From positions 186,001-250,000 of the IMG/VR virus record IMGVR_UViG_3300046092_000062: a stretch of DNA of 64,000 nt, one strand, 5' to 3'. A program made the position numbers and the translations under genes. Shown here in pieces: positions 3,820 through 25,185 of this stretch. The notes under the pieces were generated by a model. That model worked only from the letters and a program-made list of their open reading frames with translations, made no database searches and was not told the DNA's origin. Every line of letters starts with the position of its first letter. The first letter of the stretch is position 1.

Positions 3820-3979
3820 CTTAAAAGTTCCATATAAAGATATACACGAGGTTAGGCAGGCCCTTAAAGAGTCTAAAATAAAGCACTGGCCGTTTAAACG
3901 AGCATGGCCGGGGTATATAGTTACAATCGAAGATGGGCCTATGAGCACGTTTTTTGCGTTAAAGTTTACTAATACTTGA
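3803..3979 (+). CDS. LRW-family mini-protein (outlier before array I)
   Basis: AAGGA SD, ATG 3803; tail IEDGPMSTFFALKFTNT. Confidence 0.65.
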   Translation: MKKTIDLKVPYKDIHEVRQALKESKIKHWPFKRAWPGYIVTIEDGPMSTFFALKFTNT

Positions 3980-4024
3980 GTATTACTTTTTTTGGTTGAC
4001 CCATAATGAGCGTTCATGTATAAT
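3970..4024 (+). promoter_or_regulatory. early promoter with upstream palindromic box
   Basis: AATACT-TG-AGTATT palindrome, T-tract, TTGACC(3996)-17-TATAAT(4019). Confidence 0.85.
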
Positions 4025-4052
4025 ACATATATCGCAAACAAAAGGGTCAACC

Positions 4053-4409
4053 ATGAAATTCTTTCAAGAAACTACTGACTACAAAGACAAGATTTCAAAC
4101 GGCATCTACTTGCTGTCAGATGACAAGACACGTATGTTTGCCTATGTTGCACCAGGCAACAACACTGCAAAAGAATTCAAGCGCCCGATTCGCATCGACA
4201 CTCGTGGCCGCAGCTTCAAGCCTGTTACTAATACCTTCAACTATGTGATCCCTGCAGAAGTTGCCCCAGAAGTCCCGCAGTGGATTGTTAAAGGCAGCAA
4301 AGGCGATGAGTACATTGTGCGCAAAGACGGCTTGATGTATTCATGTACATGCAGCGGATTTAAATTTCGCGGTAGCTGCAAGCACGTCACGGAGATCAAA
4401 GGCGCATGA
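4053..4409 (+). CDS. SWIM-type zinc finger protein
   Basis: C-terminal YSCTCSGFKFRGSCKHV (CxC-xn-CxH). Confidence 0.75.
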   Translation: MKFFQETTDYKDKISNGIYLLSDDKTRMFAYVAPGNNTAKEFKRPIRIDTRGRSFKPVTNTFNYVIPAEVAPEVPQWIVKGSKGDEYIVRKDGLMYSCTCSGFKFRGSCKHVTEIKGA

Positions 4410-4615
4410 TTAAACGTCAGTATCATTACTATGGTGGCCGCAACGGCGATGCCTACTTCTGCAACTTTGTTGATGCAGCGGGCGGGCAAGAACACATTCG
4501 TACTGAACTAGCTAAGTGGAAAGCAACAGTTGCTAAAAGCAAAGCCAAATACACCTACAATGTCAAGTTCCACGACGAGCAGTTATACATGTTTTTTAGG
4601 ATCAAGTTTTCATGA
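4406..4615 (+). CDS. LRW-family mini-protein I-1
   Basis: tail FHDEQLYMFFRIKFS. Confidence 0.75.
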   Translation: MIKRQYHYYGGRNGDAYFCNFVDAAGGQEHIRTELAKWKATVAKSKAKYTYNVKFHDEQLYMFFRIKFS

Positions 4616-4863
4616 CAGAAGCGTGGATATTCGTTAATGGACAGAAGGTTCAGATTCCTCAGCATCCTTACCAAGCCAGGGAGTTTAGATGGCATTTGGG
4701 CGCAGAGTATAATTCTGCATTGGAGTGGGAAAATCCCGAGTTTGACAACATAAAAACTTGGTGCGAGCAAACTTGTGTTCCGCATACTTACAGAATGTTT
4801 TTGAGAAGTGTTTGGTTCTTTCGTGAGTCCGATGCCTTATTGTGCAAGTTGAGGTGGGTATGA
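4612..4863 (+). CDS. LRW-family mini-protein I-2
   Basis: WCEQ core; tail FFRESDALLCKLRWV. Confidence 0.85.
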   Translation: MTEAWIFVNGQKVQIPQHPYQAREFRWHLGAEYNSALEWENPEFDNIKTWCEQTCVPHTYRMFLRSVWFFRESDALLCKLRWV

Positions 4864-5090
4864 ACTGGCAGTTTTGGCGTAAGCAATATCGAGTGGCTGT
4901 GACAGAAAATGATTACAATGCTAAGATTGTAAAGCACATGGGCACTACTGGAAAACTCCATATGCAGTTTTTCGACTTTGTTAAGCAAGAGTTCAATGCT
5001 GATCGTGAGTGGAGTTGGAAGACCAGAGAGAATTTCCTAGTGTTTGATAATGAACATGACTACGCTATGTTTCTGTTAAGGATGCTGTGA
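4860..5090 (+). CDS. LRW-family mini-protein I-3
   Basis: start ATG 4860 (ATGA overlap); tail FDNEHDYAMFLLRML. Confidence 0.85.
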   Translation: MNWQFWRKQYRVAVTENDYNAKIVKHMGTTGKLHMQFFDFVKQEFNADREWSWKTRENFLVFDNEHDYAMFLLRML

Positions 5091-5341
5091 TGTTGATCGA
5101 ACTCGACGATGAATATCGTATGATTGGGTACTACATCGCCGTACTAGAAGATCCAATTGACAGCGGGCACGATTTGTGGTATCACGAATCATTCAAAGAC
5201 ACCGATGAATGGTGTGAGCAAACCTTTGGGGCGCAGGACATGTGGGGAGAAAATCCTGCTACAGGGTGGAAGCGTATGCGTAACAGATACTTCTTTACTA
5301 CAGATGCTGCCCGCGGGTTATTTGTATTGAGGTTTACATGA
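5087..5341 (+). CDS. LRW-family mini-protein I-4
   Basis: WCEQTFG core; tail FTTDAARGLFVLRFT. Confidence 0.85.
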   Translation: MMLIELDDEYRMIGYYIAVLEDPIDSGHDLWYHESFKDTDEWCEQTFGAQDMWGENPATGWKRMRNRYFFTTDAARGLFVLRFT

Positions 5342-5559
5342 TTGAAGTAGATATCGATAAAGAAGGCGGATATGGTCGTCACCACTGGTGGGAAAACTTT
5401 CGCGACTATGCTGAGGAACAGGGGTATAATTTCGATAATGCTGAGAATATCACCAAAGCACTTGCAGAATGGAACGCTATTGATAAGGACCCAGATTCCA
5501 CCAAGTTCTACTTTGAAAACGAGCAGGACCACTTGCTGTTTATGTTGAGGTTTACATGA
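5338..5559 (+). CDS. LRW-family mini-protein I-5
   Basis: tail FENEQDHLLFMLRFT. Confidence 0.85.
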   Translation: MIEVDIDKEGGYGRHHWWENFRDYAEEQGYNFDNAENITKALAEWNAIDKDPDSTKFYFENEQDHLLFMLRFT

Positions 5560-5840
5560 AAGTAAAAGACACACTGCAAATTGATTTGATCTACGGCACA
5601 CTCCGTCAACGCCTGCGGGAGTTTGTAGCAGAGACTCCTTGCTTGTATACAAATGACGGAGACGCTGTTAACCTTGTGTGTCATTATTTCCCCTGTTGGC
5701 AGTACAATGGTGCTGCACCGTTTGAAGAAGTTATGCTGTGGTGTGAAGAACATTTCGGCCGTGATTGGATTTGGAGATTTGAAACAATTTTCTTCAAGCA
5801 CGAACGTGATCGTGCAGTATTCTTATTGAGGTGGTCATGA
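5556..5840 (+). CDS. LRW-family mini-protein I-6
   Basis: WCEEHFG core; tail FKHERDRAVFLLRWS. Confidence 0.85.
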   Translation: MKVKDTLQIDLIYGTLRQRLREFVAETPCLYTNDGDAVNLVCHYFPCWQYNGAAPFEEVMLWCEEHFGRDWIWRFETIFFKHERDRAVFLLRWS

Positions 5841-6058
5841 CAACTCTTTACATCTCCGGGGATTACGACCAAAGCCCACTGGCATACAAAAACTTCTATC
5901 GAGCAGTGATAGAACCCAGGTTAATGGAAGTACACCGTGAATCAATTAGCGGAAGTGATCTCCTTAAAGAGTACAATGCACATTGGGATAATACATCTAA
6001 GAGCATTGTGTTTGACACTGAACACGATTTGACAATGTTTATGTTGAGGTGGGCATGA
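5837..6058 (+). CDS. LRW-family mini-protein I-7
   Basis: tail FDTEHDLTMFMLRWA. Confidence 0.85.
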   Translation: MTTLYISGDYDQSPLAYKNFYRAVIEPRLMEVHRESISGSDLLKEYNAHWDNTSKSIVFDTEHDLTMFMLRWA

Positions 6059-6306
6059 TTGTAAAAGAGTATTACCAAAACATTAACTGTAGCAAACCCA
6101 GGGACTACTTTGAGCGTTGGTATGCAGACGTGTGGGCACGACGAATCGGCACAAAGATCGCACAGCCCGGAGTGTTAGCTCGTGTACTCGAAGAAGAAAT
6201 TGCTCAAGTTGGTGCTTATCTCGAGGACAAAGATCGCGGGTACAAATTTGTAGCAACATTCAAAGACGAGCACGACTATACCATGTTTGTATTGAGGTGG
6301 TCATGA
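6055..6306 (+). CDS. LRW-family mini-protein I-8
   Basis: tail FKDEHDYTMFVLRWS. Confidence 0.85.
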   Translation: MIVKEYYQNINCSKPRDYFERWYADVWARRIGTKIAQPGVLARVLEEEIAQVGAYLEDKDRGYKFVATFKDEHDYTMFVLRWS

Positions 6307-6530
6307 AACTACGTGCCGACATTCGTCCATACTTTCAGAAGATTGCTGATTACTATTGGGACAACATTGGTCGTGACTTCTACAACGAAGGGCATCACAT
6401 AACCATTTGGGACTGGCTCAAGCGTGATTACTCTGTGGTTAAGATTGGGCAAATTGGCAGCAAGACTGAGTTATGGGTTACATTTCCAGATGAGCAGCAC
6501 ATGACTATGTTTATGTTGAGGTGGACATGA
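6303..6530 (+). CDS. LRW-family mini-protein I-9
   Basis: true start ATG 6303 (track ORF extended upstream); tail FPDEQHMTMFMLRWT. Confidence 0.85.
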   Translation: MKLRADIRPYFQKIADYYWDNIGRDFYNEGHHITIWDWLKRDYSVVKIGQIGSKTELWVTFPDEQHMTMFMLRWT

Positions 6531-6727
6531 AACAAGAGCTAACTATGCGCATGGATTGCGAATACACTTACATTCCATTTGCCAATAGCCGCACCAGCAT
6601 CGATTGGATAGAAGCACTACTTTGGTGCGAAGAGTTCGAAGGCATTGGACACTTTAGCATGGGAGGACATGGCATTTACTTCGAAAAGGAAAAAGATGCT
6701 ATAATGTTTACATTAATCAACTCATGA
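6527..6727 (+). CDS. LRW-family mini-protein I-10
   Basis: WCEE core; tail FEKEKDAIMFTLINS. Confidence 0.85.
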   Translation: MKQELTMRMDCEYTYIPFANSRTSIDWIEALLWCEEFEGIGHFSMGGHGIYFEKEKDAIMFTLINS

Positions 6728-7005
6728 AAAAGCAATATACAAGAGACTCCCTTATGAAAAAGGCACGTATTGAATCCGACCAGCTAAACACTATCTTCCA
6801 GAAGTGGGCGGCAAACAATGGGTATAAGACCTCAGGACATTGGATTGATCACCTTGATCGACTTAACCTGCGTTACGGCCCTGGCCAAGCGTTTGATCAT
6901 TATGTTTGGTCATGCGGTGGCCGCATTTACACAGAATACAGCAAGCGTTATGCAGACTTCTTTGAAGACGAAGATTTGATAATGTTTACATTAAGGCACC
7001 TATGA
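6724..7005 (+). CDS. LRW-family mini-protein I-11
   Basis: tail FEDEDLIMFTLRHL. Confidence 0.8.
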   Translation: MKKQYTRDSLMKKARIESDQLNTIFQKWAANNGYKTSGHWIDHLDRLNLRYGPGQAFDHYVWSCGGRIYTEYSKRYADFFEDEDLIMFTLRHL

Positions 7006-7187
7006 TAACAACTTTACGAGCATGGTCCAGAGTTAGTGTAAGAGACATTCAACCAGCAGTAGCATGGTGCAGTGAGAATCTTACCCACAATGATTGGGTG
7101 TGCAGTTCGATCCCAAACGACAACGAATTTAGCTTTCGATTCCGTAACGAAAAGATTGCTACAGAGTTTGCACTGAGATTTGCATGA
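7002..7187 (+). CDS. LRW-family mini-protein I-12
   Basis: WCSENL core; tail FRNEKIATEFALRFA. Confidence 0.85.
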   Translation: MITTLRAWSRVSVRDIQPAVAWCSENLTHNDWVCSSIPNDNEFSFRFRNEKIATEFALRFA

Positions 7188-7429
7188 TACGATTAGATCT
7201 TGTTAAAGACTATGCACCTATTCCGATATGGAACAAATTTGTTGGACACCTGCAAGAACAAGTGGGACCACAGGCAGTAACTGACGCTTATGTTAATACC
7301 GCACTAGCTGAGTACTGTGCAGTGTATTATATGGAAGAGGTGGGTAACATATATGAAAGTTCTGTGCTACACTGGATTGAGTTTGAAGATGAAGAATTGT
7401 ACTCTTGGTTTATGTTGAGGTGGGCATGA
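7184..7429 (+). CDS. LRW-family mini-protein I-13
   Basis: tail FEDEELYSWFMLRWA. Confidence 0.85.
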   Translation: MIRLDLVKDYAPIPIWNKFVGHLQEQVGPQAVTDAYVNTALAEYCAVYYMEEVGNIYESSVLHWIEFEDEELYSWFMLRWA

Positions 7430-7683
7430 TTAGCATATTGTTATCAGACAAGGGCAGTACTCCCGAACAAGCATGGTGGTGGAAGTTTTTACACGGCACG
7501 GATAAACGTAGCGGTCCGTCAACTACAGAAGACCGCATTGAAGCTATCAACTTGGAATTGCTAAATTGGTCAGCGCAGCTATGGCGACACGAGCAAACGG
7601 CTACGCGCCACAATGCCCGAAGCGCATACATTGATTTCTACGACGAACAAGCGTACACTTGGTTTGTGCCGAGGTGGTCATGA
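7426..7683 (+). CDS. LRW-family mini-protein I-14
   Basis: tail FYDEQAYTWFVPRWS (Pro at the conserved Leu). Confidence 0.85.
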   Translation: MISILLSDKGSTPEQAWWWKFLHGTDKRSGPSTTEDRIEAINLELLNWSAQLWRHEQTATRHNARSAYIDFYDEQAYTWFVPRWS

Positions 7684-7874
7684 TTGAAATTAAAATCAGC
7701 AAGAAACTTCGTAATGTATACGGGGAAAGTGGTACTCAGGTTGCTTGGAAATGGTGCTTAGATAACTTTGGCCCACCGGAACCAAACGGTAAGCGTTGGG
7801 CATGGGACACTATGCGCACATTTTGGTTTCATAAAGAAGAAGATGCTACACTGTTTGCACTGAGGTGGTTATGA
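7680..7874 (+). CDS. LRW-family mini-protein I-15
   Basis: WCLDNFGP core; tail FHKEEDATLFALRWL. Confidence 0.85.
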   Translation: MIEIKISKKLRNVYGESGTQVAWKWCLDNFGPPEPNGKRWAWDTMRTFWFHKEEDATLFALRWL

Positions 7875-8098
7875 CAACAATTTCAATGAGCCATAATGTT
7901 CTAACAAATGCAGGGTGGATCCGCATACCGCTTGACGCTGAAAAAGTTATGCAAGCTCGACGACATGAAAGTTATTTTGAATTTTTTGAAACTGCACACA
8001 TTCGCAACCGGTATGCAATCTTTAGTGTGCCCAATGGATACGATTTCTTTTTTCGAAATAAAAAAGATGCTACAGAGTTTGTGTTGAGGTGGGCATGA
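7871..8098 (+). CDS. LRW-family mini-protein I-16
   Basis: tail FRNKKDATEFVLRWA. Confidence 0.85.
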   Translation: MTTISMSHNVLTNAGWIRIPLDAEKVMQARRHESYFEFFETAHIRNRYAIFSVPNGYDFFFRNKKDATEFVLRWA

Positions 8099-8385
8099 CT
8101 AAAGAAGAATGGACGAAATGGAATCGCAAGATACAACTAAACAGCATCTACGGTTTAAATCTCTGTAAAGAAATAGTGGCACCAAGGGATCAAGCACTAA
8201 CAGCGATACAAAACGCATGGGCTCAATGGCACTGTGATATCAAACACAACGTAACAGACTTTGGGTTTAAAGACTGGTGCAAGCGTGAGCATGGGTTTGA
8301 ATACCAACAGAATAGTGACCGGAGTGTTGTCACTACTGTACTTGACGAGCAAAAGTATGCTTGGTTCTTACTAAAGTGGGCATGA
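8095..8385 (+). CDS. LRW-family mini-protein I-17 with N-terminal PolB motif-B-like fragment
   Basis: N-term NRKIQLNSIYG; tail VLDEQKYAWFLLKWA. Confidence 0.85.
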   Translation: MTKEEWTKWNRKIQLNSIYGLNLCKEIVAPRDQALTAIQNAWAQWHCDIKHNVTDFGFKDWCKREHGFEYQQNSDRSVVTTVLDEQKYAWFLLKWA

Positions 8386-8388
8386 AAG

Positions 8389-8598
8389 ATGCAAGTAGAG
8401 AAAATGTTCCATCACACTGTGCCTAGCTCTAATGTGTGCATACAAGCCAGTAAATGGTTGCTGGAAGAGCGTGGATACAAGTTCGTCATTGAAGCCGAAA
8501 CAGAAGGACGCGGCAACAGTTCTAGATACACTGGCAGATACACATTCAAGTTCTTGTGTGAGCAAGAGTATATGTGGTTTCTAATGAGGTGGGCATGA
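8389..8598 (+). CDS. LRW-family mini-protein I-18 (close paralogue of 23627)
   Basis: tail RYTGRYTFKFLCEQEYMWFLMRWA. Confidence 0.85.
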   Translation: MQVEKMFHHTVPSSNVCIQASKWLLEERGYKFVIEAETEGRGNSSRYTGRYTFKFLCEQEYMWFLMRWA

Positions 8599-8599
8599 C

Positions 8600-8779
8600 A
8601 TGTTAACATACCGTATGATTGACTGGGTCAACATTCAACAACGCATGATTGAAGGCGGACTCAGTGATATTCCCAATGGGCGATTTCATGACAGCTACCG
8701 TAAGGACGATTACTTGTACTTTATGGTTGAGTTCGACACACCCGAGGATGAAATGATGTTTTTATTGAGGTGGGCATGA
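8600..8779 (+). CDS. LRW-family mini-protein I-19 (59 aa, missing from ORF track)
   Basis: hand translation MLTYRMIDWVNIQQ...FDTPEDEMMFLLRWA. Confidence 0.8.
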   Translation: MLTYRMIDWVNIQQRMIEGGLSDIPNGRFHDSYRKDDYLYFMVEFDTPEDEMMFLLRWA

Positions 8780-9000
8780 ACTCAAAACAAAGACGACGTG
8801 ATCGCAGAGCATGGAAACACGACATTGTGTTTACACACGAACAAGTTTATGAACGTGGTTACAACGACATGTGGGACTGGTGTGTTACTGTTTTTAATAA
8901 CAGGGGCAACAAGTGGAGAGAGCCGTATGGTCCTCCGGGCGTTAGATGGCAGTTTACCAAGCCAGAATACGCTGTGATGTTTGCACTACGCTGGCAATAA
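8776..9000 (+). CDS. LRW-family mini-protein I-20
   Basis: DWCVTVF core; tail FTKPEYAVMFALRWQ. Confidence 0.85.
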   Translation: MNSKQRRRDRRAWKHDIVFTHEQVYERGYNDMWDWCVTVFNNRGNKWREPYGPPGVRWQFTKPEYAVMFALRWQ

Positions 9001-9002
9001 AG

Positions 9003-9058
9003 TAGTACTTGAGTATTACATTTTTTTGGTTGACCCAAAATGGTTTTGGTTGTATAAT
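9003..9058 (+). promoter_or_regulatory. early promoter with palindromic box (near-copy of 3970 element)
   Basis: TAGTACTTGAGTATTAC, T-tract, TTGACC(9030)-17-TATAAT(9053). Confidence 0.85.
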
Positions 9059-9090
9059 ATACACATAGCAAAGCAAAACAGGACTCAAAG

Positions 9091-16567: not shown

Positions 16568-16948
16568 TTGGCATACATTTTAAATAATCACAAGCATACC
16601 GGCAACTTATTTGTTGGCACAGCAACTACAGCAGCTAATCCATATTCGGTTAGTGGGGCAAATGGATATACCAATACTACATGGACCACTGCCGCCAACC
16701 CAATGACTGTTACACAACAAGCAACTATCCAGCTAAATGGCGAAAAGGCAGACATTGTTATAAACGGCAAGAGTCTCAAGGATACGTTGGAGGCATTGGA
16801 ATCGAGGTTGGCCATGTTGAAACCTGATGTCTCACTCGAAACCGAATGGGCAGAACTAAAACGGTTAGGCGATGAATACCGTAAATTGGAACTAGAGATT
16901 AAGGAAAAGATGAAAACTTGGGACACCCTTAAGAACACCTCACTTTGA
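16568..16948 (+). CDS. hypothetical protein, C-terminal coiled coil
   Basis: TTG start after GAGG. Confidence 0.7.
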   Translation: MAYILNNHKHTGNLFVGTATTAANPYSVSGANGYTNTTWTTAANPMTVTQQATIQLNGEKADIVINGKSLKDTLEALESRLAMLKPDVSLETEWAELKRLGDEYRKLELEIKEKMKTWDTLKNTSL

Positions 16949-16973
16949 CACATAAAGGCATTTAGTGTATAAT
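16945..16973 (+). promoter_or_regulatory. consensus sigma70 promoter heading array II
   Basis: TTGACA-17-TATAAT. Confidence 0.85.
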
Positions 16974-16979
16974 AGTACT

Positions 16980-17162
16980 ATGAACTCTATCACAATCAAT
17001 GGTGCCGATAAGGCACTCGAAGCAGGCGGCTGGTGCAGAAAACAATTTGGTATTAAGGGATGGACAATAGACTTGAACAGTATGTTGGGCAACAATCCCA
17101 CGTATAGGTTTGATTTCTCTAGTCCCGCTGATGCTACACTATTTGCATTAAAATGGCGGTAA
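16980..17162 (+). CDS. LRW-family mini-protein II-1
   Basis: WCRKQFG; tail FSSPADATLFALKWR. Confidence 0.85.
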   Translation: MNSITINGADKALEAGGWCRKQFGIKGWTIDLNSMLGNNPTYRFDFSSPADATLFALKWR

Positions 17163-17410
17163 CTTTAGTCGTTCATGAATTTACACTAGGTGACGTAGAT
17201 GATCCCGAAATCTACGCAGCCGTGCCCTTGTATGAATGGCAATTGAGTGATGCCGGTAAATGGGTTATGGAAAATGCTATTGAAACTCCCCAGTGGGGCA
17301 GAATCAATGATCATCTCACGTACTCACTTCGTTACAGAGTAACTGCAAAGCTCAAAGATGAGGATGCAACCTTTTTCAAGTTAAAGTATGATCACACTAA
17401 CCGACGCTGA
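17153..17410 (+). CDS. LRW-family mini-protein II-2
   Basis: tail LKDEDATFFKLKY. Confidence 0.8.
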   Translation: MAVTLVVHEFTLGDVDDPEIYAAVPLYEWQLSDAGKWVMENAIETPQWGRINDHLTYSLRYRVTAKLKDEDATFFKLKYDHTNRR

Positions 17411-17615
17411 GTGGCGTAATATTAGAAATCAAATCAGAATTGAATACGCCGACAAGCCCAGTGTTTGGCTATTGCGCTCTGTAATGAAGCGTGAGTTAGG
17501 ATTTACTGACCGCCATCATCAAGTATACAGAGAACAAACAGGTTACATCACTACTGTCTACTTGGACTTCTTTAATGATGCAGCAGAAACAATGTTTAGA
17601 TTGAAGTACTTATAA
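17388..17615 (+). CDS. LRW-family mini-protein II-3
   Basis: tail FFNDAAETMFRLKYL. Confidence 0.8.
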   Translation: MITLTDAEWRNIRNQIRIEYADKPSVWLLRSVMKRELGFTDRHHQVYREQTGYITTVYLDFFNDAAETMFRLKYL

Positions 17616-17831
17616 TTGGAATTCATTGCACGTATACTGCCCAAGTTAATTGCTGGTGTCCTAAGCATTATGGATGCCAGTCGCTTGCGGGATAAAGTAT
17701 ACCAGCAACAACACGAGCATGAGTTGATGTGGACTGCACTAGATGATATCGCACGTATGCACCCAGATCATCCGTCAGGAAAAATGGCAAAGAAAACACT
17801 AGATGAAGTTACTACACGCTACGGTAGGTAG
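17616..17831 (+). CDS. hypothetical protein (non-LRW)
   Basis: 71-aa ORF abutting previous stop. Confidence 0.65.
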   Translation: MEFIARILPKLIAGVLSIMDASRLRDKVYQQQHEHELMWTALDDIARMHPDHPSGKMAKKTLDEVTTRYGR

Positions 17832-18219
17832 GTTTCAGGCATGGCGCCATGCACGTTACCTCAAAAAGAAGGGCTGGACCCAGCGCCAGTTTGACCTCAT
17901 CAACGATCCTGATTTTTGCGCACGTGGCAGCAGTATTCGTAAAGATGTCTATCGCGGCTATCCCTACTTAATCTCGTTTGACGACACAGTACCAATGGAA
18001 CGGCGATATGGTCAAGGATGGATCACCGTAGTTGATAATATGACAGCGTGGTGCGAAGCGAATGTTACAGGCAAATGGAGAGAAGATATCCTTGCAGTCG
18101 ACAAGAGTTGGGACGACGAATGGACGCAAGGGTGCATGGGCCTAAGCCACAACATTCTATTCTTTGCATTTAACAATGAGCAAGATGCAGTAATGTTTAG
18201 TCTATACTGGAGTGTGTAA
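17803..18219 (+). CDS. LRW-family protein II-4 with long N-terminal extension
   Basis: AWCEAN core; tail FNNEQDAVMFSLYWSV; start uncertain. Confidence 0.8.
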   Translation: MKLLHATVGRFQAWRHARYLKKKGWTQRQFDLINDPDFCARGSSIRKDVYRGYPYLISFDDTVPMERRYGQGWITVVDNMTAWCEANVTGKWREDILAVDKSWDDEWTQGCMGLSHNILFFAFNNEQDAVMFSLYWSV

Positions 18220-18437
18220 TGAACATCGAATTCAAACATCGCCCGGACCGATACTACGAGTGGGAAATGTACTACAGTCCACAGGGCCCCGAAATGGGCG
18301 AAGTATACGGTTGGTGCTGGGAAACATTCGGTCACCCAGGACTAGCATTAGGTAATGGAACTTGGGATAACCACGGCGGATGGATTAAGTTTCGCAGAGA
18401 AGAAGATATGACTATGTTTATGTTGAGGTGGAGCTAA
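18219..18437 (+). CDS. LRW-family mini-protein II-5
   Basis: WCWETFG; tail FRREEDMTMFMLRWS. Confidence 0.85.
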   Translation: MNIEFKHRPDRYYEWEMYYSPQGPEMGEVYGWCWETFGHPGLALGNGTWDNHGGWIKFRREEDMTMFMLRWS

Positions 18438-18703
18438 TGGAATTATTTTATGGTGGCGGCGGACGCAGTAACCCGGACTTTATACACAAGGTGCGGGTTA
18501 GCAAAAAACGTGCAGGTGATGTTAGTCCACTGATGAAGTGGTGCGACGATTACCCAACTGGTGATAAGGGCTACTTTAAACGCTACTACATCGATTGGCG
18601 TGGTGACACAAAGAGCTGGGATAGTGACTATGTTACATTCCAATTTGAATGGGAACAAGCTGCTATCATGTTTGCTCTAAGTTTTGCGGACAGCGTATGC
18701 TAA
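18437..18703 (+). CDS. LRW-family mini-protein II-6
   Basis: KWCDD; tail FEWEQAAIMFALSF. Confidence 0.8.
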   Translation: MELFYGGGGRSNPDFIHKVRVSKKRAGDVSPLMKWCDDYPTGDKGYFKRYYIDWRGDTKSWDSDYVTFQFEWEQAAIMFALSFADSVC

Positions 18704-19765: not shown

Positions 19766-20032
19766 ATGGACAACGTTATTCACAGCAACAAATATTTCCG
19801 ATTAACTAAATGGCGCCATCGCAAAAGCGACAAGGTGCATTATCGCGTTGAGATGACATACAGTTGGTTGAATCTGGACCAAGAAGCAGGGGAGAAAAGT
19901 TTTCCTGAGCAAGTTCGCGATGTAATCGACCCAACTCGTTGTCGTGCTGGGCAAGCTGGCAACCACTGGAAATACCGTAACTTAGAAGAAGCTACAAAAG
20001 CCTATACATTTTTAGTAATGAAATTCTCATGA
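19766..20032 (+). CDS. LRW-family mini-protein II-8 (divergent)
   Basis: tail YRNLEEATKAYTFLVMKFS. Confidence 0.7.
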   Translation: MDNVIHSNKYFRLTKWRHRKSDKVHYRVEMTYSWLNLDQEAGEKSFPEQVRDVIDPTRCRAGQAGNHWKYRNLEEATKAYTFLVMKFS

Positions 20033-20310
20033 GTTATAAACTTAAACTAGCACACAAGCATCACGATCAATTAGATCAAATTGAAGCATGGCTCAACGCT
20101 AACGTTGGCCCTGGTAGCAAACGACATGCAAACAACACCTGGCTCGGTGCCGAAGATTGGTACTGCTATGAAGAAGCACTAGTTCCGGGCAGCGAGGAAG
20201 AGGAAGAAGAGTATTACGACAACGATGACAATCTTGAAGATATTTCAGATTTGATCTTTGTATTCCGCCGCGAAAGCGATCTGTTAATGTTTAGTTTGAA
20301 ATGGGCATAG
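20029..20310 (+). CDS. LRW-family mini-protein II-9 with acidic insertion
   Basis: SEEEEEEYYDNDDNLED; tail FRRESDLLMFSLKWA; TAG stop. Confidence 0.85.
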   Translation: MSYKLKLAHKHHDQLDQIEAWLNANVGPGSKRHANNTWLGAEDWYCYEEALVPGSEEEEEEYYDNDDNLEDISDLIFVFRRESDLLMFSLKWA

Positions 20311-20311
20311 C

Positions 20312-20668
20312 ATGTCTAGTCCTTTTAAACTCACAGATCTCCCCAACAACACTTGGTCAGTAACATGGACCGAGAATAACTTTGCACATAATGCTAAACA
20401 GCGAGACAAGTTAGTAGATATTCTGTTTAGCGAAATTGGATGCCGCGACGTTGGCCTAGGCATTAAACTAAACAATGGCGAACTAGAAACACTGTGGATT
20501 GGTGAAAAAGAGTATTTTCAACGGTCCGACATAGCCCACGGATGGGAAGACATGTATGTTGTTCGTGGTGTTGTGTTCATTCACGAACACGAAGCTAGGG
20601 AGTTTCATCAATTGATGGAAAGTCGATTGGCTTGGTACTACTTAAAGCAAGGTGCAGCAGTTGCTTGA
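20312..20668 (+). CDS. divergent LRW-like protein II-10
   Basis: FIHEHEAREF followed by a helical extension. Confidence 0.65.
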   Translation: MSSPFKLTDLPNNTWSVTWTENNFAHNAKQRDKLVDILFSEIGCRDVGLGIKLNNGELETLWIGEKEYFQRSDIAHGWEDMYVVRGVVFIHEHEAREFHQLMESRLAWYYLKQGAAVA

Positions 20669-20879
20669 AATTCCATACCCAACCCTAATGAATGGCAGTC
20701 GCACGTTCTCTATGGAAACTCTACAAAAGTGGCTTGACGCACACTTTCCTCAAGAACGTTCCTGCATTGTCCGTGTTGCTATTGTTAACAAAGGGCCTGG
20801 GAGGTACGGCGACGAACGATGGGCGATTCGTTTTTATCGGGATGAAGATGCAACACTGTTTGGATTGTTATGGCAGTAA
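20652..20879 (+). CDS. LRW-family mini-protein II-11
   Basis: tail FYRDEDATLFGLLWQ; start GTG 20652 or ATG 20688. Confidence 0.8.
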   Translation: MQQLLEIPYPTLMNGSRTFSMETLQKWLDAHFPQERSCIVRVAIVNKGPGRYGDERWAIRFYRDEDATLFGLLWQ

Positions 20880-21127
20880 CCTATAAAACTAATCCGGGAT
20901 TCCCAGGTGTTAATTTTCCCGTGTTGCACCGTGTTGTCTATGCACACACCATCGATGGTGTCCCAGCACAATGGCAAATCAGCTACAAGGATTATATAGT
21001 CAATGAATGGCTTAAAGCAAACACACGCCATCCTTACTACCACAGTCCCGGGTATCTTCGTGAAAAGTTCATTGAGTTTGAATGTGATGAAGAAGCAGTG
21101 CTATTCGCACTAAAGTGGGCAAAGTAA
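20870..21127 (+). CDS. LRW-family mini-protein II-12
   Basis: tail FECDEEAVLFALKWAK. Confidence 0.85.
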   Translation: MAVTYKTNPGFPGVNFPVLHRVVYAHTIDGVPAQWQISYKDYIVNEWLKANTRHPYYHSPGYLREKFIEFECDEEAVLFALKWAK

Positions 21128-21357
21128 TGTACAGCAAGACTCACCGATTTTTTAAATTCAAACACGTTCCCAAGGACTTTATATGGGGCAGTGAGGAAAT
21201 TGACCTGTGCCGCCTGCACATTGGTGACAACCGTATCACGATGCCGCTTGTGGACCGCGAATGGTTTAGTTCGCCCGATGGTGTATGGATTCGACATGAT
21301 TGTCTGGATAACGAAATCATAACTTGGTTTGCACTGAAAGCAAGCAATGAAGTTTGA
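21127..21357 (+). CDS. LRW-family mini-protein II-13
   Basis: tail LDNEIITWFALKA. Confidence 0.75.
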   Translation: MYSKTHRFFKFKHVPKDFIWGSEEIDLCRLHIGDNRITMPLVDREWFSSPDGVWIRHDCLDNEIITWFALKASNEV

Positions 21358-21607
21358 ACTGCTAGAAGGGCGCATACACGGAGCCCGTTACTACACAGTT
21401 AGACCAGACTTTAATTGGTGGCTTTCGGGCAGCTTAAACAATACAAATGCCACCTGGCGTGATATGTTAGAATGGTGTGTAGAAGTATTCGGTCCTAGCG
21501 CAGAAATGGGTGTGTGGGAACCCGGTGCTCGTTGGTATGCTAACAATGCAAAGTTTTGGTTTCGTAATGCAGAAGATAGGACAGCGTTTTTGCTGAGATG
21601 GTCATGA
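21347..21607 (+). CDS. LRW-family mini-protein II-14
   Basis: EWCVEVFGP; tail FRNAEDRTAFLLRWS. Confidence 0.85.
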   Translation: MKFELLEGRIHGARYYTVRPDFNWWLSGSLNNTNATWRDMLEWCVEVFGPSAEMGVWEPGARWYANNAKFWFRNAEDRTAFLLRWS

Positions 21608-21837
21608 AACCAGACCTAGTCCAATTTTACTGCGAACGAGATCCCTATTACGCTAAATCACGTGAGTACTACATGATGAACGTAAATCATTACGAAACTC
21701 CTTATTACCTTTGGATGATACAGGAATATCGCACTGTGCTGTTAAACAAACAGGGTAGCTGGAGCGACAGGGCTGAACAGCATTGGGGCTTTATTAATGA
21801 ATCGGATAGAACAATTTTTATGTTGAGATGGTCATGA
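21604..21837 (+). CDS. LRW-family mini-protein II-15
   Basis: tail FINESDRTIFMLRWS. Confidence 0.85.
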   Translation: MKPDLVQFYCERDPYYAKSREYYMMNVNHYETPYYLWMIQEYRTVLLNKQGSWSDRAEQHWGFINESDRTIFMLRWS

Positions 21838-22064
21838 CAACTACTGTTGAATTTGGTAAAGATCGTTATCACTTACAGGGTGAAATGGAAGAATGGTGCG
21901 AGCACAATATTGGGTCTAATCCTCGTTATAGCAACCACGTTTGGTCCAAGCCAGTTGAGTGGGAAGGGTTAGGCACATGGTGCATGGCTAGTGCGTTTGG
22001 CACAACATTTTTCTACTTTAAACATCGCAAAGATGCAACCTTCTTTGCATTGAAATGGAAATAA
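21834..22064 (+). CDS. LRW-family mini-protein II-16
   Basis: EWCEHNIG; tail FKHRKDATFFALKWK. Confidence 0.85.
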   Translation: MTTTVEFGKDRYHLQGEMEEWCEHNIGSNPRYSNHVWSKPVEWEGLGTWCMASAFGTTFFYFKHRKDATFFALKWK

Positions 22065-22065
22065 T

Positions 22066-22428
22066 ATGGATGATCGGAATCTTTGGCACCTGCTATGTGA
22101 TTGGGTAAAATTTGGTAAGTTTATAGAATGGAAAGAATGGTTTTACTGGACCATTGTGCCTGGCACTAGCATTGGGGTCATTTGGCCAAATGGCCCAATT
22201 TCTCTGGGTTGTGATCCTGATGGCGAAGAGGTAATCGTCGACTCCGCTGATCCAAACGATCACTATCGCCCATGGTTAGAAGAGCATGTCGGGCGTCAGG
22301 GCATTGATTGGGAATGGAGAATGGGAACTTTTGGATTTTGGACAGATGAAATAGATACTCTAGACATTAAGTTTCGAGTGGGAAAGACAAAGTATGCTAC
22401 AATAGCAGCATTGATGTGGGGCCAATGA
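22066..22428 (+). CDS. LRW-family protein II-17, extended N-terminus
   Basis: WLEEHVG core; tail KYATIAALMWGQ. Confidence 0.75.
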   Translation: MDDRNLWHLLCDWVKFGKFIEWKEWFYWTIVPGTSIGVIWPNGPISLGCDPDGEEVIVDSADPNDHYRPWLEEHVGRQGIDWEWRMGTFGFWTDEIDTLDIKFRVGKTKYATIAALMWGQ

Positions 22429-22628
22429 GAACCAAAACTACAAGAGAACTATATCCGTACCATGTGCGCTTTAAGCGTACAGGAGATTGGTATGGCAATG
22501 ATGGTACTTGGTATCAAATTAGCACATGGCTTCGAGAACACTTTGGGCAGAATTGGGAATATCTTGACAGTATGTTTATGTTCTCTAAGGAAGAACACAA
22601 AATGCTTTTTATAATGAGATGGCTATGA
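22425..22628 (+). CDS. LRW-family mini-protein II-18
   Basis: WLREHFG; tail FSKEEHKMLFIMRWL. Confidence 0.85.
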   Translation: MRTKTTRELYPYHVRFKRTGDWYGNDGTWYQISTWLREHFGQNWEYLDSMFMFSKEEHKMLFIMRWL

Positions 22629-23044
22629 CAAAACGCAACACCGTAGTAATGGATATCGAAACCACAACAGCAGTAATGCCGCGTGGGTCTTCTTCTGTTT
22701 TTCAGGGCATCACAGGTGGAATACATCCTGGAGAAATGATGATTTATGCCGGGGGCAGACAAACTGGCAAGTCCACACTGTCTTACCATATATTAAAGAG
22801 CAGATACTACGAAATGGGCATCAAGGAACAAATCCAGACGTTGGATACGTTTACACTAGATGGTGCTACATGGTACACTGTACACTGTCGTCCTTCGACT
22901 ATTAGTGGGTGGGTGCAAGAGCAAGACTCCGATATGTGGTGCCGACACTACAACACAGGCGCACTGCGAGTTGAATACCCCACGTTTAACAACTACAACA
23001 TACACGAAGAACTGTATTCAATGTTATTGTTGAAATGGTCATGA
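22625..23044 (+). CDS. LRW-family protein II-19 with DnaB-like Walker A fragment
   Basis: GGIHPGEMMIYAGGRQTGKST; tail IHEELYSMLLLKWS. Confidence 0.8.
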   Translation: MTKRNTVVMDIETTTAVMPRGSSSVFQGITGGIHPGEMMIYAGGRQTGKSTLSYHILKSRYYEMGIKEQIQTLDTFTLDGATWYTVHCRPSTISGWVQEQDSDMWCRHYNTGALRVEYPTFNNYNIHEELYSMLLLKWS

Positions 23045-23406
23045 AAATCTTAAAACAAACTGTAGCAGCTAAGACTTGCACCCTCAAAGCCAATTGGACT
23101 ATTGATCGCTCAGCAGACAATAGCTTTACGATCGGTGATGATACGTGGCAAGAGGTTGGGGCAGCACTACGAAAAGAGATTGATGAAGAAATTGTTAACA
23201 ATATTAGAAGGCATGAGCTTATGTTAAAAGGATGGGTCAAGGCCCCGTTTACTAGCGACAAGTTTGCTACACCAGGCAACCACCAGATAGCAGAAGTTAC
23301 TGCATGGATTCACATGAACACCACGGCGCAATATCAAATCTTCGGCCGAGAGTTCTGGTTCTCAAGCAAGGAAGACTTAACACTGTTTGTACTGAGGTGG
23401 GCATGA
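23041..23406 (+). CDS. LRW-family protein II-20 with major-capsid (gp23-like) fragment
   Basis: ILKQTVAAKT..LKANWT...AAL.KEIDEEIV; tail FSSKEDLTLFVLRWA. Confidence 0.8.
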   Translation: MKILKQTVAAKTCTLKANWTIDRSADNSFTIGDDTWQEVGAALRKEIDEEIVNNIRRHELMLKGWVKAPFTSDKFATPGNHQIAEVTAWIHMNTTAQYQIFGREFWFSSKEDLTLFVLRWA

Positions 23407-23630
23407 GCTATACACTGTACCCCGACGAAGACATTCTAAAGAAGCAACGATATATCGTTAAGTACAGAGGGAGCCTGTATGGGCACCGCGACGAGATGCT
23501 TGCCTGGTGTGTAGAACAGTTTGGTCCACATTCACATGCCTACAAAAATCCACGATGGAGTGAAAACTGGGACCGATTCTGCTTTAAGAATGAAAGCGAC
23601 ATGATGCTGTTTATGTTGAGATGGTCATGA
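23403..23630 (+). CDS. LRW-family mini-protein II-21
   Basis: WCVEQFGP; tail FKNESDMMLFMLRWS. Confidence 0.85.
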   Translation: MSYTLYPDEDILKKQRYIVKYRGSLYGHRDEMLAWCVEQFGPHSHAYKNPRWSENWDRFCFKNESDMMLFMLRWS

Positions 23631-23893
23631 CAGATACAGATAAATTAGAGTGGTCAGATATTTGCCGCCATGAGCATAAGTGCAAGGGTGATGAATTGTT
23701 ATATCACACTGTGCCTAGCTATAGTGTATATGTCAGGGCATCTAAATGGTTGCGGGAAGAGCGTGGGTACAAGTTTATCAGCGTAGAGGGTGAAACGGAA
23801 GAACATAGTGCTGGTTGGCGTTACACGGGTAGGTATACTTTTAAGTTCTTGTGCGAGCAAGAGTATATGTGGTTTAAGTTGAGGTGGTCGTGA
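23627..23893 (+). CDS. LRW-family mini-protein II-22 (close paralogue of 8389)
   Basis: tail RYTGRYTFKFLCEQEYMWFKLRWS. Confidence 0.85.
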   Translation: MTDTDKLEWSDICRHEHKCKGDELLYHTVPSYSVYVRASKWLREERGYKFISVEGETEEHSAGWRYTGRYTFKFLCEQEYMWFKLRWS

Positions 23894-24180
23894 TGAGTAG
23901 ACCAGGTTTTAATTCACAAGAGTGGTTTCGGGCCAAGCATGACCCAAAACATGATATGGTACATGGCGATAGACTGTATTACGTTGAGCCAGGTTGCGAA
24001 TACGGGTTCAAAGAAGATGACGGATATGTGTGGAATCGCATAAGCTGTAGCTATTGGTTCGGGGACTGGATTGAAGAAAATGGCGGTGAGGGACGTTGGC
24101 GAGCATACGGCGGCAGGCATCGTGCTATCTACATTGTGCGCGAAGACCTACTAGCGTTTATTAAGTTAAAGTGGCTATGA
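23893..24180 (+). CDS. LRW-family mini-protein II-23
   Basis: DWIEENG; tail VREDLLAFIKLKWL. Confidence 0.8.
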   Translation: MSRPGFNSQEWFRAKHDPKHDMVHGDRLYYVEPGCEYGFKEDDGYVWNRISCSYWFGDWIEENGGEGRWRAYGGRHRAIYIVREDLLAFIKLKWL

Positions 24181-24377
24181 AATACTGGAACAAAGACAAA
24201 CGTGTTCGGCAAAACCATTGGTATACAATTACTTCGCCTACATGGTGGTCGTATGCTGATACTAAACTAGAGTTGCAGAGATTTGACAGTCCGGGTAAGT
24301 TTTATCTATATTACGGCAGTAGAACAATTTGGTTTGAGCGTGAACAAGACGCAGTATTTTTTAGATTGAAGATGTGA
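24177..24377 (+). CDS. LRW-family mini-protein II-24
   Basis: tail FEREQDAVFFRLKM. Confidence 0.8.
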   Translation: MKYWNKDKRVRQNHWYTITSPTWWSYADTKLELQRFDSPGKFYLYYGSRTIWFEREQDAVFFRLKM

Positions 24378-24378
24378 T

Positions 24379-24570
24379 ATGAAGCAATATGGCCTAGCGA
24401 TTGAACGTTGGGGGCATCCACGTAAGGCAACTATATGGCATTGGCTTAAACAAAACTTTGGCCCCGAGGGTGATCGTTGGGGCACACAGTATGACTACGG
24501 ACTGGACAATCTCTGGATGAATGAAGATGTTTACATCATGTATAAATTAAAATGGGAACAACATGACTGA
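24379..24570 (+). CDS. LRW-family mini-protein II-25
   Basis: WLKQNFGP; tail MNEDVYIMYKLKW. Confidence 0.8.
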   Translation: MKQYGLAIERWGHPRKATIWHWLKQNFGPEGDRWGTQYDYGLDNLWMNEDVYIMYKLKWEQHD

Positions 24571-24961: not shown

Positions 24962-24998
24962 TATTTCACGCTACGTACTGCCAACACAGTCCGAGCAA

Positions 24999-25175
24999 AT
25001 GGACGCATGGTTCAATGGCGGGCACTTAATTGTGCTAACAGACATTATGTATTGGAGCGCTCACTACCAAGACTTAGCAGACTGGTGTAAAGGAAACGAT
25101 TCCCAAGTGCAAGGAATGACAGTGGTAGTACCCAATGAAAAAGTATTAACTTTATTCTGCCTACGCTGGTCGTAA
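24999..25175 (+). CDS. LRW-family mini-protein II-27 (58 aa, missing from track)
   Basis: hand translation MDAWFNGG...ADWCKG...VPNEKVLTLFCLRWS. Confidence 0.75.
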   Translation: MDAWFNGGHLIVLTDIMYWSAHYQDLADWCKGNDSQVQGMTVVVPNEKVLTLFCLRWS

Positions 25176-25185
25176 TAAGTACAGT

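What the first reader, a model, noticed from the sequence alone, without database searches (positions are those of the whole stretch)
5820..8779. Dual-coded junction: the L-R-W codons are the Shine-Dalgarno site and start of the next gene
Seen: junctions read TTG-AGG-TGG-NC-ATGA, placing GAGG 5 nt upstream of the next ATG, which overlaps the stop. GAGGTGG occurs at 14 junctions I counted: 4851, 5828, 6046, 6294, 6518, 7417, 7671, 7862, 8086, 8586, 8767, 18425, 23394 and 23881. Exact repeats: TTTATGTTGAGGTGGGCATGA at 6038 and 7409; TTTATGTTGAGATGGTCATGA at 21817 and 23610; a 25-mer at 6501 and 18408. Core genes here mostly use CGT/CGC for Arg (by eye), so AGG looks selected for SD function. Inference: each cassette brings the translation signal for whatever follows, and the 20-25 nt microhomology could serve as the recombination site that shuffles cassettes without an integrase.
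Basis: partly seen in the sequence, partly recalled or inferred. Interest (0 to 1): 0.85.

Follow-up and report, generated by a model that had tools for sequence, protein, structure and literature searches.

The report
Ribosome-site tails joining phage gene cassettes
About forty small related genes of an uncultured giant phage end in the same Leu-Arg-Trp tail, whose codons also form the ribosome-binding site for the next, overlapping gene. Related phages differ by whole genes cut exactly at these joints. The principle is known, but this is an unusually clean, standardised and widespread example.

Summary
There are 17 copies on the + strand and none on the - strand, against 4.25 expected on both strands.

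The window is part of a 320.8-kb IMG/VR jumbo-phage contig. About 40 small + strand genes in 4.4-27 kb form one uncharacterised family ending F-x-L-[R/K]-W-x-stop, mostly chained by ATGA overlaps.

The codon claim holds:
- AGG is 4% of Arg codons in other genes but 18 of 27 in the tails.
- In 93 other viral loci, AGG is tied to a start codon 3-9 nt downstream: 124 AGG versus 39 other in coupled tails, 9 versus 46 in uncoupled ones (cluster level, OR 16).
- GAGG lies at an aligned spacing of 5 nt, the register used by the phage's ordinary genes.

Relatives support cassette exchange at the joint:
- A ~91%-identical phage differs by whole-cassette gains, losses and replacements, with crossover points in the last 4-15 nt.
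- A more distant contig carries the cassettes in permuted order.

Both principles are already known: a Shine-Dalgarno site inside the upstream gene at 4-nt overlaps, and modular shuffling at conserved regulatory motifs (PeSLs). This is a new coding variant. Translation and recombination remain untested experimentally.

The parts
3970..4043 (+). Conserved terminator-like hairpin, T-run and sigma-70-like promoter (TTGACC-17-TATAAT at 3996-4024) upstream of array 1
   Evidence: It is 80% identical to the block at 9003-9078.
4053..4409 (+). Lead gene of the operon (118 aa, not a family member), with its own AAGGG Shine-Dalgarno site. The first cassette is coupled to it by ATGA.
4406..9000 (+). Array 1: 21 consecutive family cassettes (59-96 aa). 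They are joined by 4-nt ATGA overlaps except at 5090 (1-nt overlap), 8385/8389 and 8598/8600. The last gene ends CTA-CGC-TGG-CAA-TAA.
5826..5840 (+). Typical junction TTG-AGG-TGG-TCA-TGA. The Leu-Arg-Trp codons give GAGGTGGTC, a 9-bp match to the anti-SD with one G-U pair. The ATG of the next gene overlaps the TGA stop.
   Evidence: (-14.1 kcal/mol). Equivalent GAGGTGG junctions start at 4851, 6046, 6294, 6518, 7417, 7671, 7862, 8086, 8586, 8767, 18425, 23394 and 23881.
8989..9000 (+). Uncoupled end of array 1. The same L-R-W motif is written CTA-CGC-TGG, followed by CAA-TAA and no overlapping start.
   Evidence: A second case is at 25164-25175 (CGC-TGG-TCG-TAA).
9003..9078 (+). Hairpin (7 bp), T-run and TTGACC-17-TATAAT promoter block closing array 1 and opening the DNA ligase operon
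16945..18703 (+). Array 2: a perfect TTGACA-17-TATAAT promoter (16945-16973) followed by family cassettes 16980-17162, 17388-17615, 17803-18219 and 18219-18437. Other small ORFs are interspersed.
19766..27200 (+). Array 3: about 20 family cassettes with mixed junction types (AGG-TGG, AGA-TGG, AAA/AAG-TGG). A 402-aa non-family gene at 25186-26394 interrupts it.
21823..21837 (+). AGA variant of the junction (TTG-AGA-TGG-TCA-TGA). It has no GAGG but creates two in-frame ATGs (ATG-GTC-ATG) for the next gene. The same 21-mer is at 23610-23630.
4612..4863 (+). Cassette present in the window but absent from the ~91%-identical relative. Breakpoints are at the two ATGA overlaps. Cassettes 5090-5341, 7426-7683 and 8389-8598 behave the same way.
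7680..7874 (+). Cassette shared at 90% nt / 95% aa with contig L084, which is otherwise ~70% nt identical. There it sits in a different neighbourhood. Homology stops exactly at the ATGA.

Best explanation
The region holds operons of paralogous early-type gene cassettes in an uncultured jumbo phage. Each cassette encodes a small beta-alpha-beta-beta-alpha protein whose C-terminal helix ends in F-x-L-[R/K]-W, followed by one more residue.

Where another gene follows, the stop overlaps its start (ATGA). The Leu-Arg-Trp codons are then written NNG-AGG-TGG, so they also spell GAGGTG(G). That is a strong Shine-Dalgarno sequence 5 nt (aligned) before the overlapping ATG. Ribosomes finishing one cassette, or binding afresh, therefore start the next one. 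A chain of up to 21 genes is translated from one transcript without any intergenic DNA.

Every cassette ends in the same connector, so a cassette can be deleted, inserted or moved to another joint and the neighbour still gets a ribosome site and an in-register start. The short identical stretch at the joint is the likely crossover point.

Shown here: the anatomy, the codon bias and its dependence on a downstream start, purifying selection, the fold, and breakpoints at the joints in relatives.

Inferred: that the SD is used in vivo, whether by termination-reinitiation or de novo initiation, and that short-homology recombination rather than selection alone places the breakpoints.
For: Family and anatomy:
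- About 38-40 + strand ORFs carry the tail, against 1 on the - strand.
- pN/pS is 0.25 between orthologues.
- The AF2 model has pLDDT 89.6, with the tail inside helix 53-63.

Shine-Dalgarno reading:
- Duplex energies are -10 to -14 kcal/mol.
- Aligned spacing is 5 nt in 13 of 17 tails. Other genes peak at 4-6 nt.

Codon choice:
- Window tails have 18/27 AGG against 29/697 elsewhere.
- In other contigs AGG is 80% of tail Arg codons against an 8.8% background. The preceding base is G in 94%. Control Phe TTT is 82% against 66%.
- At cluster level, coupled tails are 124 AGG to 39 other and uncoupled tails 9 to 46 (OR 16, p 4e-15).
- The two R-type tails that end in TAA without an overlapping start use CGC.
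- One orthologue pair reads AGG with ATGA in the window. In the relative, where the downstream gene differs, it reads AAA-TGG-AGT-TAG.
- GAGGTGG cores are unchanged in 7 of 7 orthologue pairs that keep L-R-W, although pS is 0.41.

Shuffling:
- Against the ~91% relative there are four window-only cassettes, one relative-only cassette and two to three replacements. Crossovers map to the last 4-15 nt.
- Cassette order is permuted in L084, and cassettes there are more similar than the flanking genes.
- 32% of homology-block ends lie within 5 nt of a joint, against 1.4% at random.
- 40 isolated single-cassette matches of at least 85% identity link different contigs.

Precedent:
- Removing intragenic SDs at ATGA overlaps lowers reinitiation by 60-90% or more in 4 of 5 E. 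coli gene pairs (PMC6728339).
Against: - There is no expression or translation data, and the host is unknown.
- Predicted accessibility of the motif is unremarkable (unpaired probability 0.43 against 0.47 for the surrounding window).
- Some coupled tails use AGA, AAG/AAA or CGN, so GAGG is not obligatory.
- 'Coupled' was defined from sequence alone. Array ends may have a different history.
- A paired-orthologue test was noisy: 8 changes in the expected direction against 3.
- Microhomology at mapped crossovers can be as short as 4-6 nt.
- Selection for intact ORFs could by itself place visible breakpoints at joints.
- Over all seven tail codons, synonymous divergence equals that of gene bodies (pS 0.41 in both). 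Only the GAGGTGG core is conserved.
Confidence: 0.65

Rival explanations
1. Descent and concerted evolution only. The tails share TTG-AGG-TGG because all cassettes descend from one ancestor and are homogenised by gene conversion. The resemblance to a Shine-Dalgarno site is incidental.
For: - Cassettes are paralogues in tandem.
- Exact 21-25-mers occur between cassettes that are otherwise dissimilar.
- In the first, cruder classification AGG was still 48% in tails scored as uncoupled.
Against: - With a better start definition and one vote per cluster, uncoupled tails drop to 9/55 AGG, near background.
- The bias is specific to the bases that make GAGG. Leu third base is G in 78-94%, while the control Phe codon hardly moves.
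- CGC is used in the two TAA-terminated tails without an overlapping start.
- The spacing equals that of ordinary genes.
Confidence: 0.1
2. A selection filter, not a recombination site. Rearrangements arise by random illegitimate or replication-slippage events. Only those that keep whole, coupled ORFs survive, so breakpoints merely appear to sit at the joints.
For: - Some crossovers share only ATGA or 5-6 nt (events g2 and g4).
- Cassette 8389-8598 is a 5'-truncated copy of the 23627-23893 type. It has imperfect joints on both sides (ATGA followed by a new ATG 4-5 nt later), which looks like a scar.
Against: - Nearly all joints are scar-free ATGA overlaps.
- Crossover intervals for g14, g18 and r5 fall inside 10-15 nt shared by both parental tails.
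- Single-cassette blocks recur between contigs with both ends 0-3 nt from joints.
- In T4-type phages, PeSLs are reported to direct modular shuffling and to form mini-circles (PMC2839356).
Confidence: 0.3
3. A purely protein-level signal. L-R-W-x is conserved only because it is a structural or recognition element of the protein, such as a helix cap, binding motif or degron. Nucleotide conservation follows from that.
For: - [R/K]-W plus one residue is kept even in uncoupled tails.
- The tail is part of the predicted C-terminal helix.
- The phage encodes a ClpA-like ATPase at 58527-60818.
Against: It explains the amino acids but not the choice of a rare Arg codon and a G-ending Leu codon. It also does not explain why those choices depend on a downstream start.
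Confidence: 0.1
4. GAGGTGG is a DNA- or RNA-level signal of another kind, such as a Chi-like recombination hotspot or a frameshift or pausing stimulator that fuses cassettes.
For: - All 17 copies are on one strand.
- The 3' half, GGTGG, resembles the E. coli Chi core (from my own knowledge, a lead only).
Against: - Only 3 of 17 copies lie outside tails, which is no more than chance.
- The strand bias follows from all genes being on the + strand.
- There is no slippery heptamer at the joints.
- Every downstream ORF has its own ATG in the SD register.
Confidence: 0.03

Closest known systems
Intragenic Shine-Dalgarno sites at 4-nt (ATGA) gene overlaps, translational coupling, and the resulting codon bias at gene ends (Huber et al. 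2019, PMC6728339; Eyre-Walker 1996, as cited in PMC8410138)
   Same: Co-directional genes overlap by ATGA. The SD lies in the 3' codons of the upstream gene, which constrains its codon and stop use (TGA is favoured).
   Different: Here the SD is not an ad hoc feature of individual gene pairs. It is written in one conserved amino-acid motif shared by about 40 paralogues per genome and hundreds across contigs. The SD is unusually strong, and up to 21 genes are chained.
[quoted passage not shown] 2010, PMC2839356; Comeau et al. 2014, PMC4122927)
   Same: A short conserved expression signal flanks small, non-essential ORFan-like early genes. Insertions, deletions and replacements between close relatives are bounded by it. 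The element brings the expression signal for the neighbouring gene.
   Different: PeSLs are ~100-bp intergenic transcription signals. Here the element is 15-25 nt of coding sequence plus a translation signal, with no intergenic DNA. PeSL-like hairpin-plus-promoter blocks do exist in this window, but between arrays (3970-4043, 9003-9078), not between cassettes.
Integron gene-cassette arrays
   Same: Promoterless small cassettes sit in one orientation behind a common promoter. Cassette content and order vary between relatives.
   Different: No attC-like inverted repeats lie at the joints. No integrase was seen in the window. The cassettes are paralogues of one family rather than unrelated genes.
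Mosaic joints at gene boundaries in lambdoid and other phages (Juhala 2000 and Clark 2001; cited from my own knowledge)
   Same: Homology blocks between phages end at gene boundaries. The debate between short conserved boundary sequences and selection acting on random events is the same.
   Different: Here a defined, repeated, dual-function sequence sits at every boundary.

Membership tests
Translationally coupled overlapping gene pairs with an intragenic SD | Co-directional genes whose stop and start overlap (ATGA or TGATG) | tested here: met
   50 of 143 adjacent + strand pairs overlap by 4 nt and 11 overlap by 1 nt. Nearly all joints of array 1 are of this kind.
Translationally coupled overlapping gene pairs with an intragenic SD | [quoted passage not shown] | tested here: met
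   GAGGTG(G) gives -10 to -14 kcal/mol. Aligned spacing is 5 nt, as for other genes.
Translationally coupled overlapping gene pairs with an intragenic SD | Downstream translation depends on upstream translation or termination and on the SD | not testable with these tools
   This needs reporter constructs. There is precedent in E. coli and H. volcanii (PMC6728339).
PeSL-mediated modular shuffling | The flanking element is a sigma-70 promoter plus a stem-loop terminator in intergenic DNA | tested here: not met
   Cassettes overlap, so there is no intergenic DNA. Promoter-like and terminator-like sites in the scanned region 3000-19000, which contains array 1, are not above shuffled expectation. 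Such blocks occur only at array borders.
PeSL-mediated modular shuffling | Indels and replacements between close relatives are bounded by the conserved element | tested here: met
PeSL-mediated modular shuffling | Excised mini-circles carrying one cassette and one chimeric element | not testable with these tools
   This needs outward-facing PCR or long reads on phage DNA.
Integron | attC-type imperfect inverted repeats at cassette ends | tested here: not met
   No recurrent inverted repeat lies at the joints of 4400-9100.
Integron | An adjacent IntI tyrosine recombinase | tested here: inconclusive
   No integrase appears among the 25 of 40 matched PHROG families that were listed for the 50 larger window proteins, or among the Pfam hits. 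Only 64 kb of the 320.8-kb contig could be read.
Any described protein family (Pfam, PHROGs, PADLOC, PDB) | A significant profile or fold match for the cassette protein | tested here: not met
   Pfam, PHROGs, PADLOC, PDB sequence and PDB fold searches gave nothing significant. The only relatives are unnamed metagenomic or 'uncultured Caudovirales phage' proteins.

The most novel reading that the evidence does not exclude
The L-R-W/ATGA tail is a standardised coding connector carrying both a translation-coupling signal and a short-homology crossover site. It lets a whole clade of uncultured, apparently freshwater jumbo phages trade and reorder single early-gene cassettes without a site-specific recombinase, in effect an integrase-free, integron-like system. 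Some cassettes fuse the family domain to short copies of the most conserved segments of the major capsid protein. The arrays might therefore be an arsenal of decoys or modulators aimed at host defences that sense phage structural proteins.
Probability: 0.2. Interest if true: 0.75.

Novelty: new variant of a known kind. Interest (0 to 1): 0.5.

Why it matters
This is a natural example of a standard part junction. One short sequence satisfies a protein fold, a ribosome-binding site, a stop and a start. It recurs at hundreds of joints in many uncultured large phages.

It gives a clean, quantitative case of selection on a rare codon for a non-coding function. AGG makes up 76% of coupled tails and 16% of uncoupled tails, against a background of about 9%.

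It also extends the PeSL idea, that regulatory motifs act as shuffling points for accessory genes, from transcription signals in intergenic DNA to a translation signal inside coding sequence.

Practically, it flags a large uncharacterised family of early phage proteins. Some members are capsid-fragment chimeras worth testing for host-takeover or anti-defence roles.

Tried and rejected
- Nearest phage: megablast of the array against INPHARED found nothing. tblastn of two typical cassettes found nothing even at E = 1. The nearest cultured relatives of the ligase and the ClpA-like protein are only 36-44% identical.
- Family identity: Pfam, PHROGs, PADLOC, a PDB profile search and PDB Foldseek gave no significant match. 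The cluster look-up gave no names.
- Bacterial genomes: the 21-mer has one match in 596 Gb, in a Lachnospiraceae contig in a different sequence context. That is probably chance. It serves as a calibration for the 96 IMG/VR matches.
- RNA accessibility of the motif shows no consistent pattern.
- The paired-orthologue codon test was too noisy because 'uncoupled' was misclassified. A cluster-level test replaced it.
- Synonymous divergence over the whole 7-codon tail is no lower than in gene bodies. Only the GAGGTGG core is conserved.
- No attC-like inverted repeats were found.
- Frameshift and Chi-like readings were rejected on anatomy.


Full report
**What is in the window.** All long ORFs lie on the + strand, and G+C is 43.8%. 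Pfam identifies several proteins:
- NAMPT at 59-1462
- an ATP-dependent DNA ligase at 9422-10738
- a clamp-loader-like AAA protein at 38596-39513
- a TctC-family binding protein at 51662-52654
- a ClpA/B-like ATPase at 58527-60818

PHROGs adds PhoH, MazG, endolysin and structural proteins. The array has no nucleotide match in INPHARED, and the ligase and the ClpA-like protein have only 36-44% protein matches there. The window is identical to part of IMG/VR contig IMGVR_UViG_3300046092_000062, which is 320,767 bp long. Window base 1 corresponds to contig base 186001. It is therefore an uncultured jumbo phage.

**Checking the observation.** All 14 GAGGTGG positions are exact. The motif occurs 17 times on the + strand and never on the - strand, against 4.25 +/- 1.94 expected on both strands. 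The three exact repeats are also as stated. Each of the 14 sites lies in the last codons of a small ORF, and in most the TGA stop overlaps the next ATG. Minor corrections:
- The two bases before ATGA vary.
- The junctions at 18425 and 23881 use 1-nt overlaps (TAATG and TGATG) instead.

**The genes are one family.** A motif scan finds 38 + strand ORFs, against 1 on the - strand, that end in [hydrophobic]-x-[LMPI]-[RK]-[WFYMH] plus 0-2 residues. All lie between 4.4 and 27 kb. They fall into three arrays:
- 4406-9000, with 21 consecutive cassettes
- 16980-18703
- 19766-27200

An alignment of 37 members shows about 14% mean column identity. It carries a shared pattern, W(C)xxxFG ... W ... F-x-F-x-x-E-x-D-x-x-x-F-x-L-R-W-x.

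Several results show these are real genes:
- Thirteen orthologue pairs with a close relative give pN/pS 0.25. The family evolves faster than flanking genes (pN 0.10 against 0.026).
- AlphaFold2 on the alignment gives a confident beta-alpha-beta-beta-alpha model (pLDDT 89.6, pTM 0.73). The tail closes the C-terminal helix at residues 53-63.

No Pfam, PHROG, PADLOC, PDB-sequence or PDB-fold match exists. The only relatives are unnamed metagenomic proteins and 'uncultured Caudovirales phage' entries.

The exact 21-mer TTYATGTTGAGGTGGNCATGA occurs in 96 IMG/VR stretches, including contigs of 236-374 kb. It occurs once in 596 Gb of bacterial genomes, in a different sequence context.

**Is the tail a Shine-Dalgarno site?** GAGGTGGTC pairs with the conserved 16S tail over 9 positions, one of them a G-U pair. 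Computed duplex energies for the AGG-TGG joints are -10 to -14 kcal/mol (-16.2 at the 23881 joint). The phage's usual AAGGA-type sites give about -5.6. When aligned to the SD consensus, the last G of GGAGG lies 5 nt before the ATG in 13 of 17 tail joints. The phage's other genes peak at 4-6 nt. The motif therefore sits in the normal register.

**Is AGG selected?**
- In the window, AGG is 29 of 697 Arg codons in non-family genes and 12 of 178 in cassette bodies, but 18 of 27 in tails.
- In 93 loci from other contigs, excluding the seed matches, AGG is 311 of 387 tail Arg codons against an 8.8% background. The base before it is G in 94% of cases, so GAGG is formed whatever the preceding amino acid. 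Position-wise, the Leu third base is G in 78%, against 32% G-ending Leu codons in the background. The control Phe codon moves only from 66% to 82% TTT.
- The bias depends on context. Of 513 tails, AGG tails are coupled to a start 3-9 nt downstream in 306 of 329 cases. Lys tails are coupled in 59 of 98 and other Arg codons in 46 of 86.
- I counted one vote per body-sequence cluster and context, using 188 clusters. Coupled tails are 124 AGG to 39 other, and uncoupled tails are 9 to 46 (OR 16, p 4e-15).
- Within the window, the two R-type tails that end in TAA without an overlapping start (8776-9000 and 24999-25175) keep L-R-W but write it CTA-CGC-TGG.
- The orthologue of cassette 8600-8779 has a different downstream gene in the relative. 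There it reads TTA-AAA-TGG-AGT-TAG, which supplies a GGAG from the Trp-Ser codons instead.
- Among the 7 orthologue pairs that keep L-R-W in both phages, the GAGGTGG core never changed, although pS is 0.41.
- [R/K]-W survives without coupling. The amino acids are therefore constrained by the protein, and the codons by the ribosome site. This is genuine dual coding.

**Known background for this part.** SD motifs inside the upstream gene are the rule at ATGA overlaps in most prokaryotic groups. Removing them lowered reinitiation by 60-90% or abolished it in 4 of 5 E. coli gene pairs (PMC6728339). The constraint this places on codon and stop use at gene ends was described by Eyre-Walker in 1996, as cited in PMC8410138. 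The principle is not new.

**Is the joint a recombination site?**

*The close relative.* IMGVR_UViG_3300048625_000152 (loci L075 plus L017) is identical over this region to 3300043418_000072. It is about 91% identical to the window in flanking DNA and 80-85% identical in the array. Gene by gene:
- It lacks window cassettes 4612-4863, 5090-5341, 7426-7683 and 8389-8598.
- It has one extra cassette.
- It has replacements at 7871-8098 and 8776-9000.

Three-way comparisons place each crossover in the last 4-15 nt of the tail or in the ATGA. For 7426-7683, the switch from left-parent to right-parent sequence falls within GAGGTGG itself.

*The more distant contig.* L084 belongs to a 30.6-kb contig whose flanking genes are 51-83% aa identical to the window. 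It has one array of roughly 30 cassettes. The recognisable orthologues stand in the order 18219, 5556, 5837, 5338, 4860, 7680, 7184. The window order is 4860, 5338, 5556, 5837, 7184, 7680, 18219. Some cassettes reach 95% aa and 90% nt identity, more than the flanks. For 7680-7874 the homology ends exactly at its ATGA.

*Across all loci.*
- 32% of homology-block ends lie within 5 nt of a family joint, against 1.4% for random points.
- 40 single-cassette-sized matches of at least 85% identity have no collinear neighbouring similarity.

Cassettes are gained, lost, replaced and reordered as whole units cut at the joint. These data cannot separate short-homology recombination at the tail from random events filtered by selection for intact, coupled ORFs. 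Cassette 8389-8598 argues that not every event is clean. It is a 5'-truncated copy of the 23627-23893 type, and the joints on both sides are imperfect.

**Comparison with known systems.** The nearest functional analogue for the shuffling part is the PeSL of T4-type phages. PeSLs are ~100-bp promoter-plus-stem-loop motifs flanking ORFans. They bound the indels between phi1 and RB49, bring their own expression signals, and form mini-circles (PMC2839356; PMC4122927). The joints here fail the defining PeSL feature, because there is no intergenic promoter or terminator. They share the behaviour.

PeSL-like blocks do exist at the array borders. A hairpin, a T-run and TTGACC-17-TATAAT occur at 3970-4043 and 9003-9078, and the two blocks are 80% identical. 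The relative has extra genes between duplicated copies of this block.

Integron membership fails on attC-like repeats. No integrase was seen in the window.

**Verdict.** The SD and codon-selection reading is well supported computationally. The recombination reading passes its proposed test but remains mechanistically open. The system is a new coding variant of two known phenomena, found in an uncharacterised and widespread family of jumbo-phage early proteins.

Noticed in passing
window 24563-24961 and 23035-23406: Two cassettes are chimeras of a major-capsid-protein fragment and the family's C-terminal domain. Residues 11-35 of the first are 56% identical to PA5oct MCP 59-83 (Pfam Gp23 27.2 bits, above the 24.4 cut-off). 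Residues 1-81 of the second are 36% identical to PA5oct MCP 150-228. All listed INPHARED tblastn hits lie under capsid genes. Five of 48 long family members from other contigs also hit Gp23. From memory only, the first fragment corresponds to the conserved gp23 region that contains the T4 Gol peptide. A decoy or defence-related role is speculation.
   Followed up: partly
window 22619-23044: A 141-aa cassette has a P-loop-like segment (GGRQTGKST). It gives weak PHROG hits to the Walker-A regions of UvsX-like recombinase, DnaB-like helicase and NrdA (E 6e-4 to 5e-3). It may be another fragment chimera.
   Followed up: partly
window 11241-12427, 43474-43877, 47038-47265: A second small-gene family (N-terminus M-x-x-R-I-x-E-L, C-terminus H-F-G-V-E-E-stop) has tail codons TTY-GGA-GTT-GAA-GAA-TGA. 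These supply a GGAG Shine-Dalgarno site for the next ATGA-overlapping gene. The relative also shows a replacement bounded by these joints at 11501/11962.
   Followed up: partly
window 1515-1589: ARAGORN calls a tRNA with anticodon CTA and labels it tRNA-Pyl. That is an amber-suppressor-type tRNA. ORFs in this window are intact under the standard code, so no recoding is evident here.
   Followed up: no
window 3970-4043, 9003-9078, 9361-9415; R1 (L075+L017) 6912-6995, 7416-7478, 7744-7799: A repeated block of a weak hairpin, a T-run and a TTGACC-17-TATAAT promoter sits at operon borders. It resembles a PeSL. The close relative has extra genes between duplicated copies.
   Followed up: partly
window 21598/21604, 21828/21834, 22619/22625, 23035/23041, 23621/23627: Where the tail reads AGA-TGG or AAA-TGG followed by NNA-TGA, the A-TG-G creates a second ATG. 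It is in frame with the ATGA start and two codons upstream (for example ATG-GTC-ATG), so the next protein may begin M-V-M or M-A-M.
   Followed up: no
window 8382-8391 and 8595-8602: At two joints the ATGA is present but opens only a 3-14 codon ORF. The real cassette starts at another ATG 4-5 nt later. These look like scars flanking the 5'-truncated cassette 8389-8598, a paralogue of 23627-23893 with 74% nt identity.
   Followed up: partly
window 51662-52654, 59-1462, 58527-60818: The phage carries auxiliary genes: a TctC-family solute-binding protein, NAMPT and a ClpA/B-like unfoldase. From my own knowledge, TctC/Bug proteins are expanded in Betaproteobacteria, which hints at the host.
   Followed up: no
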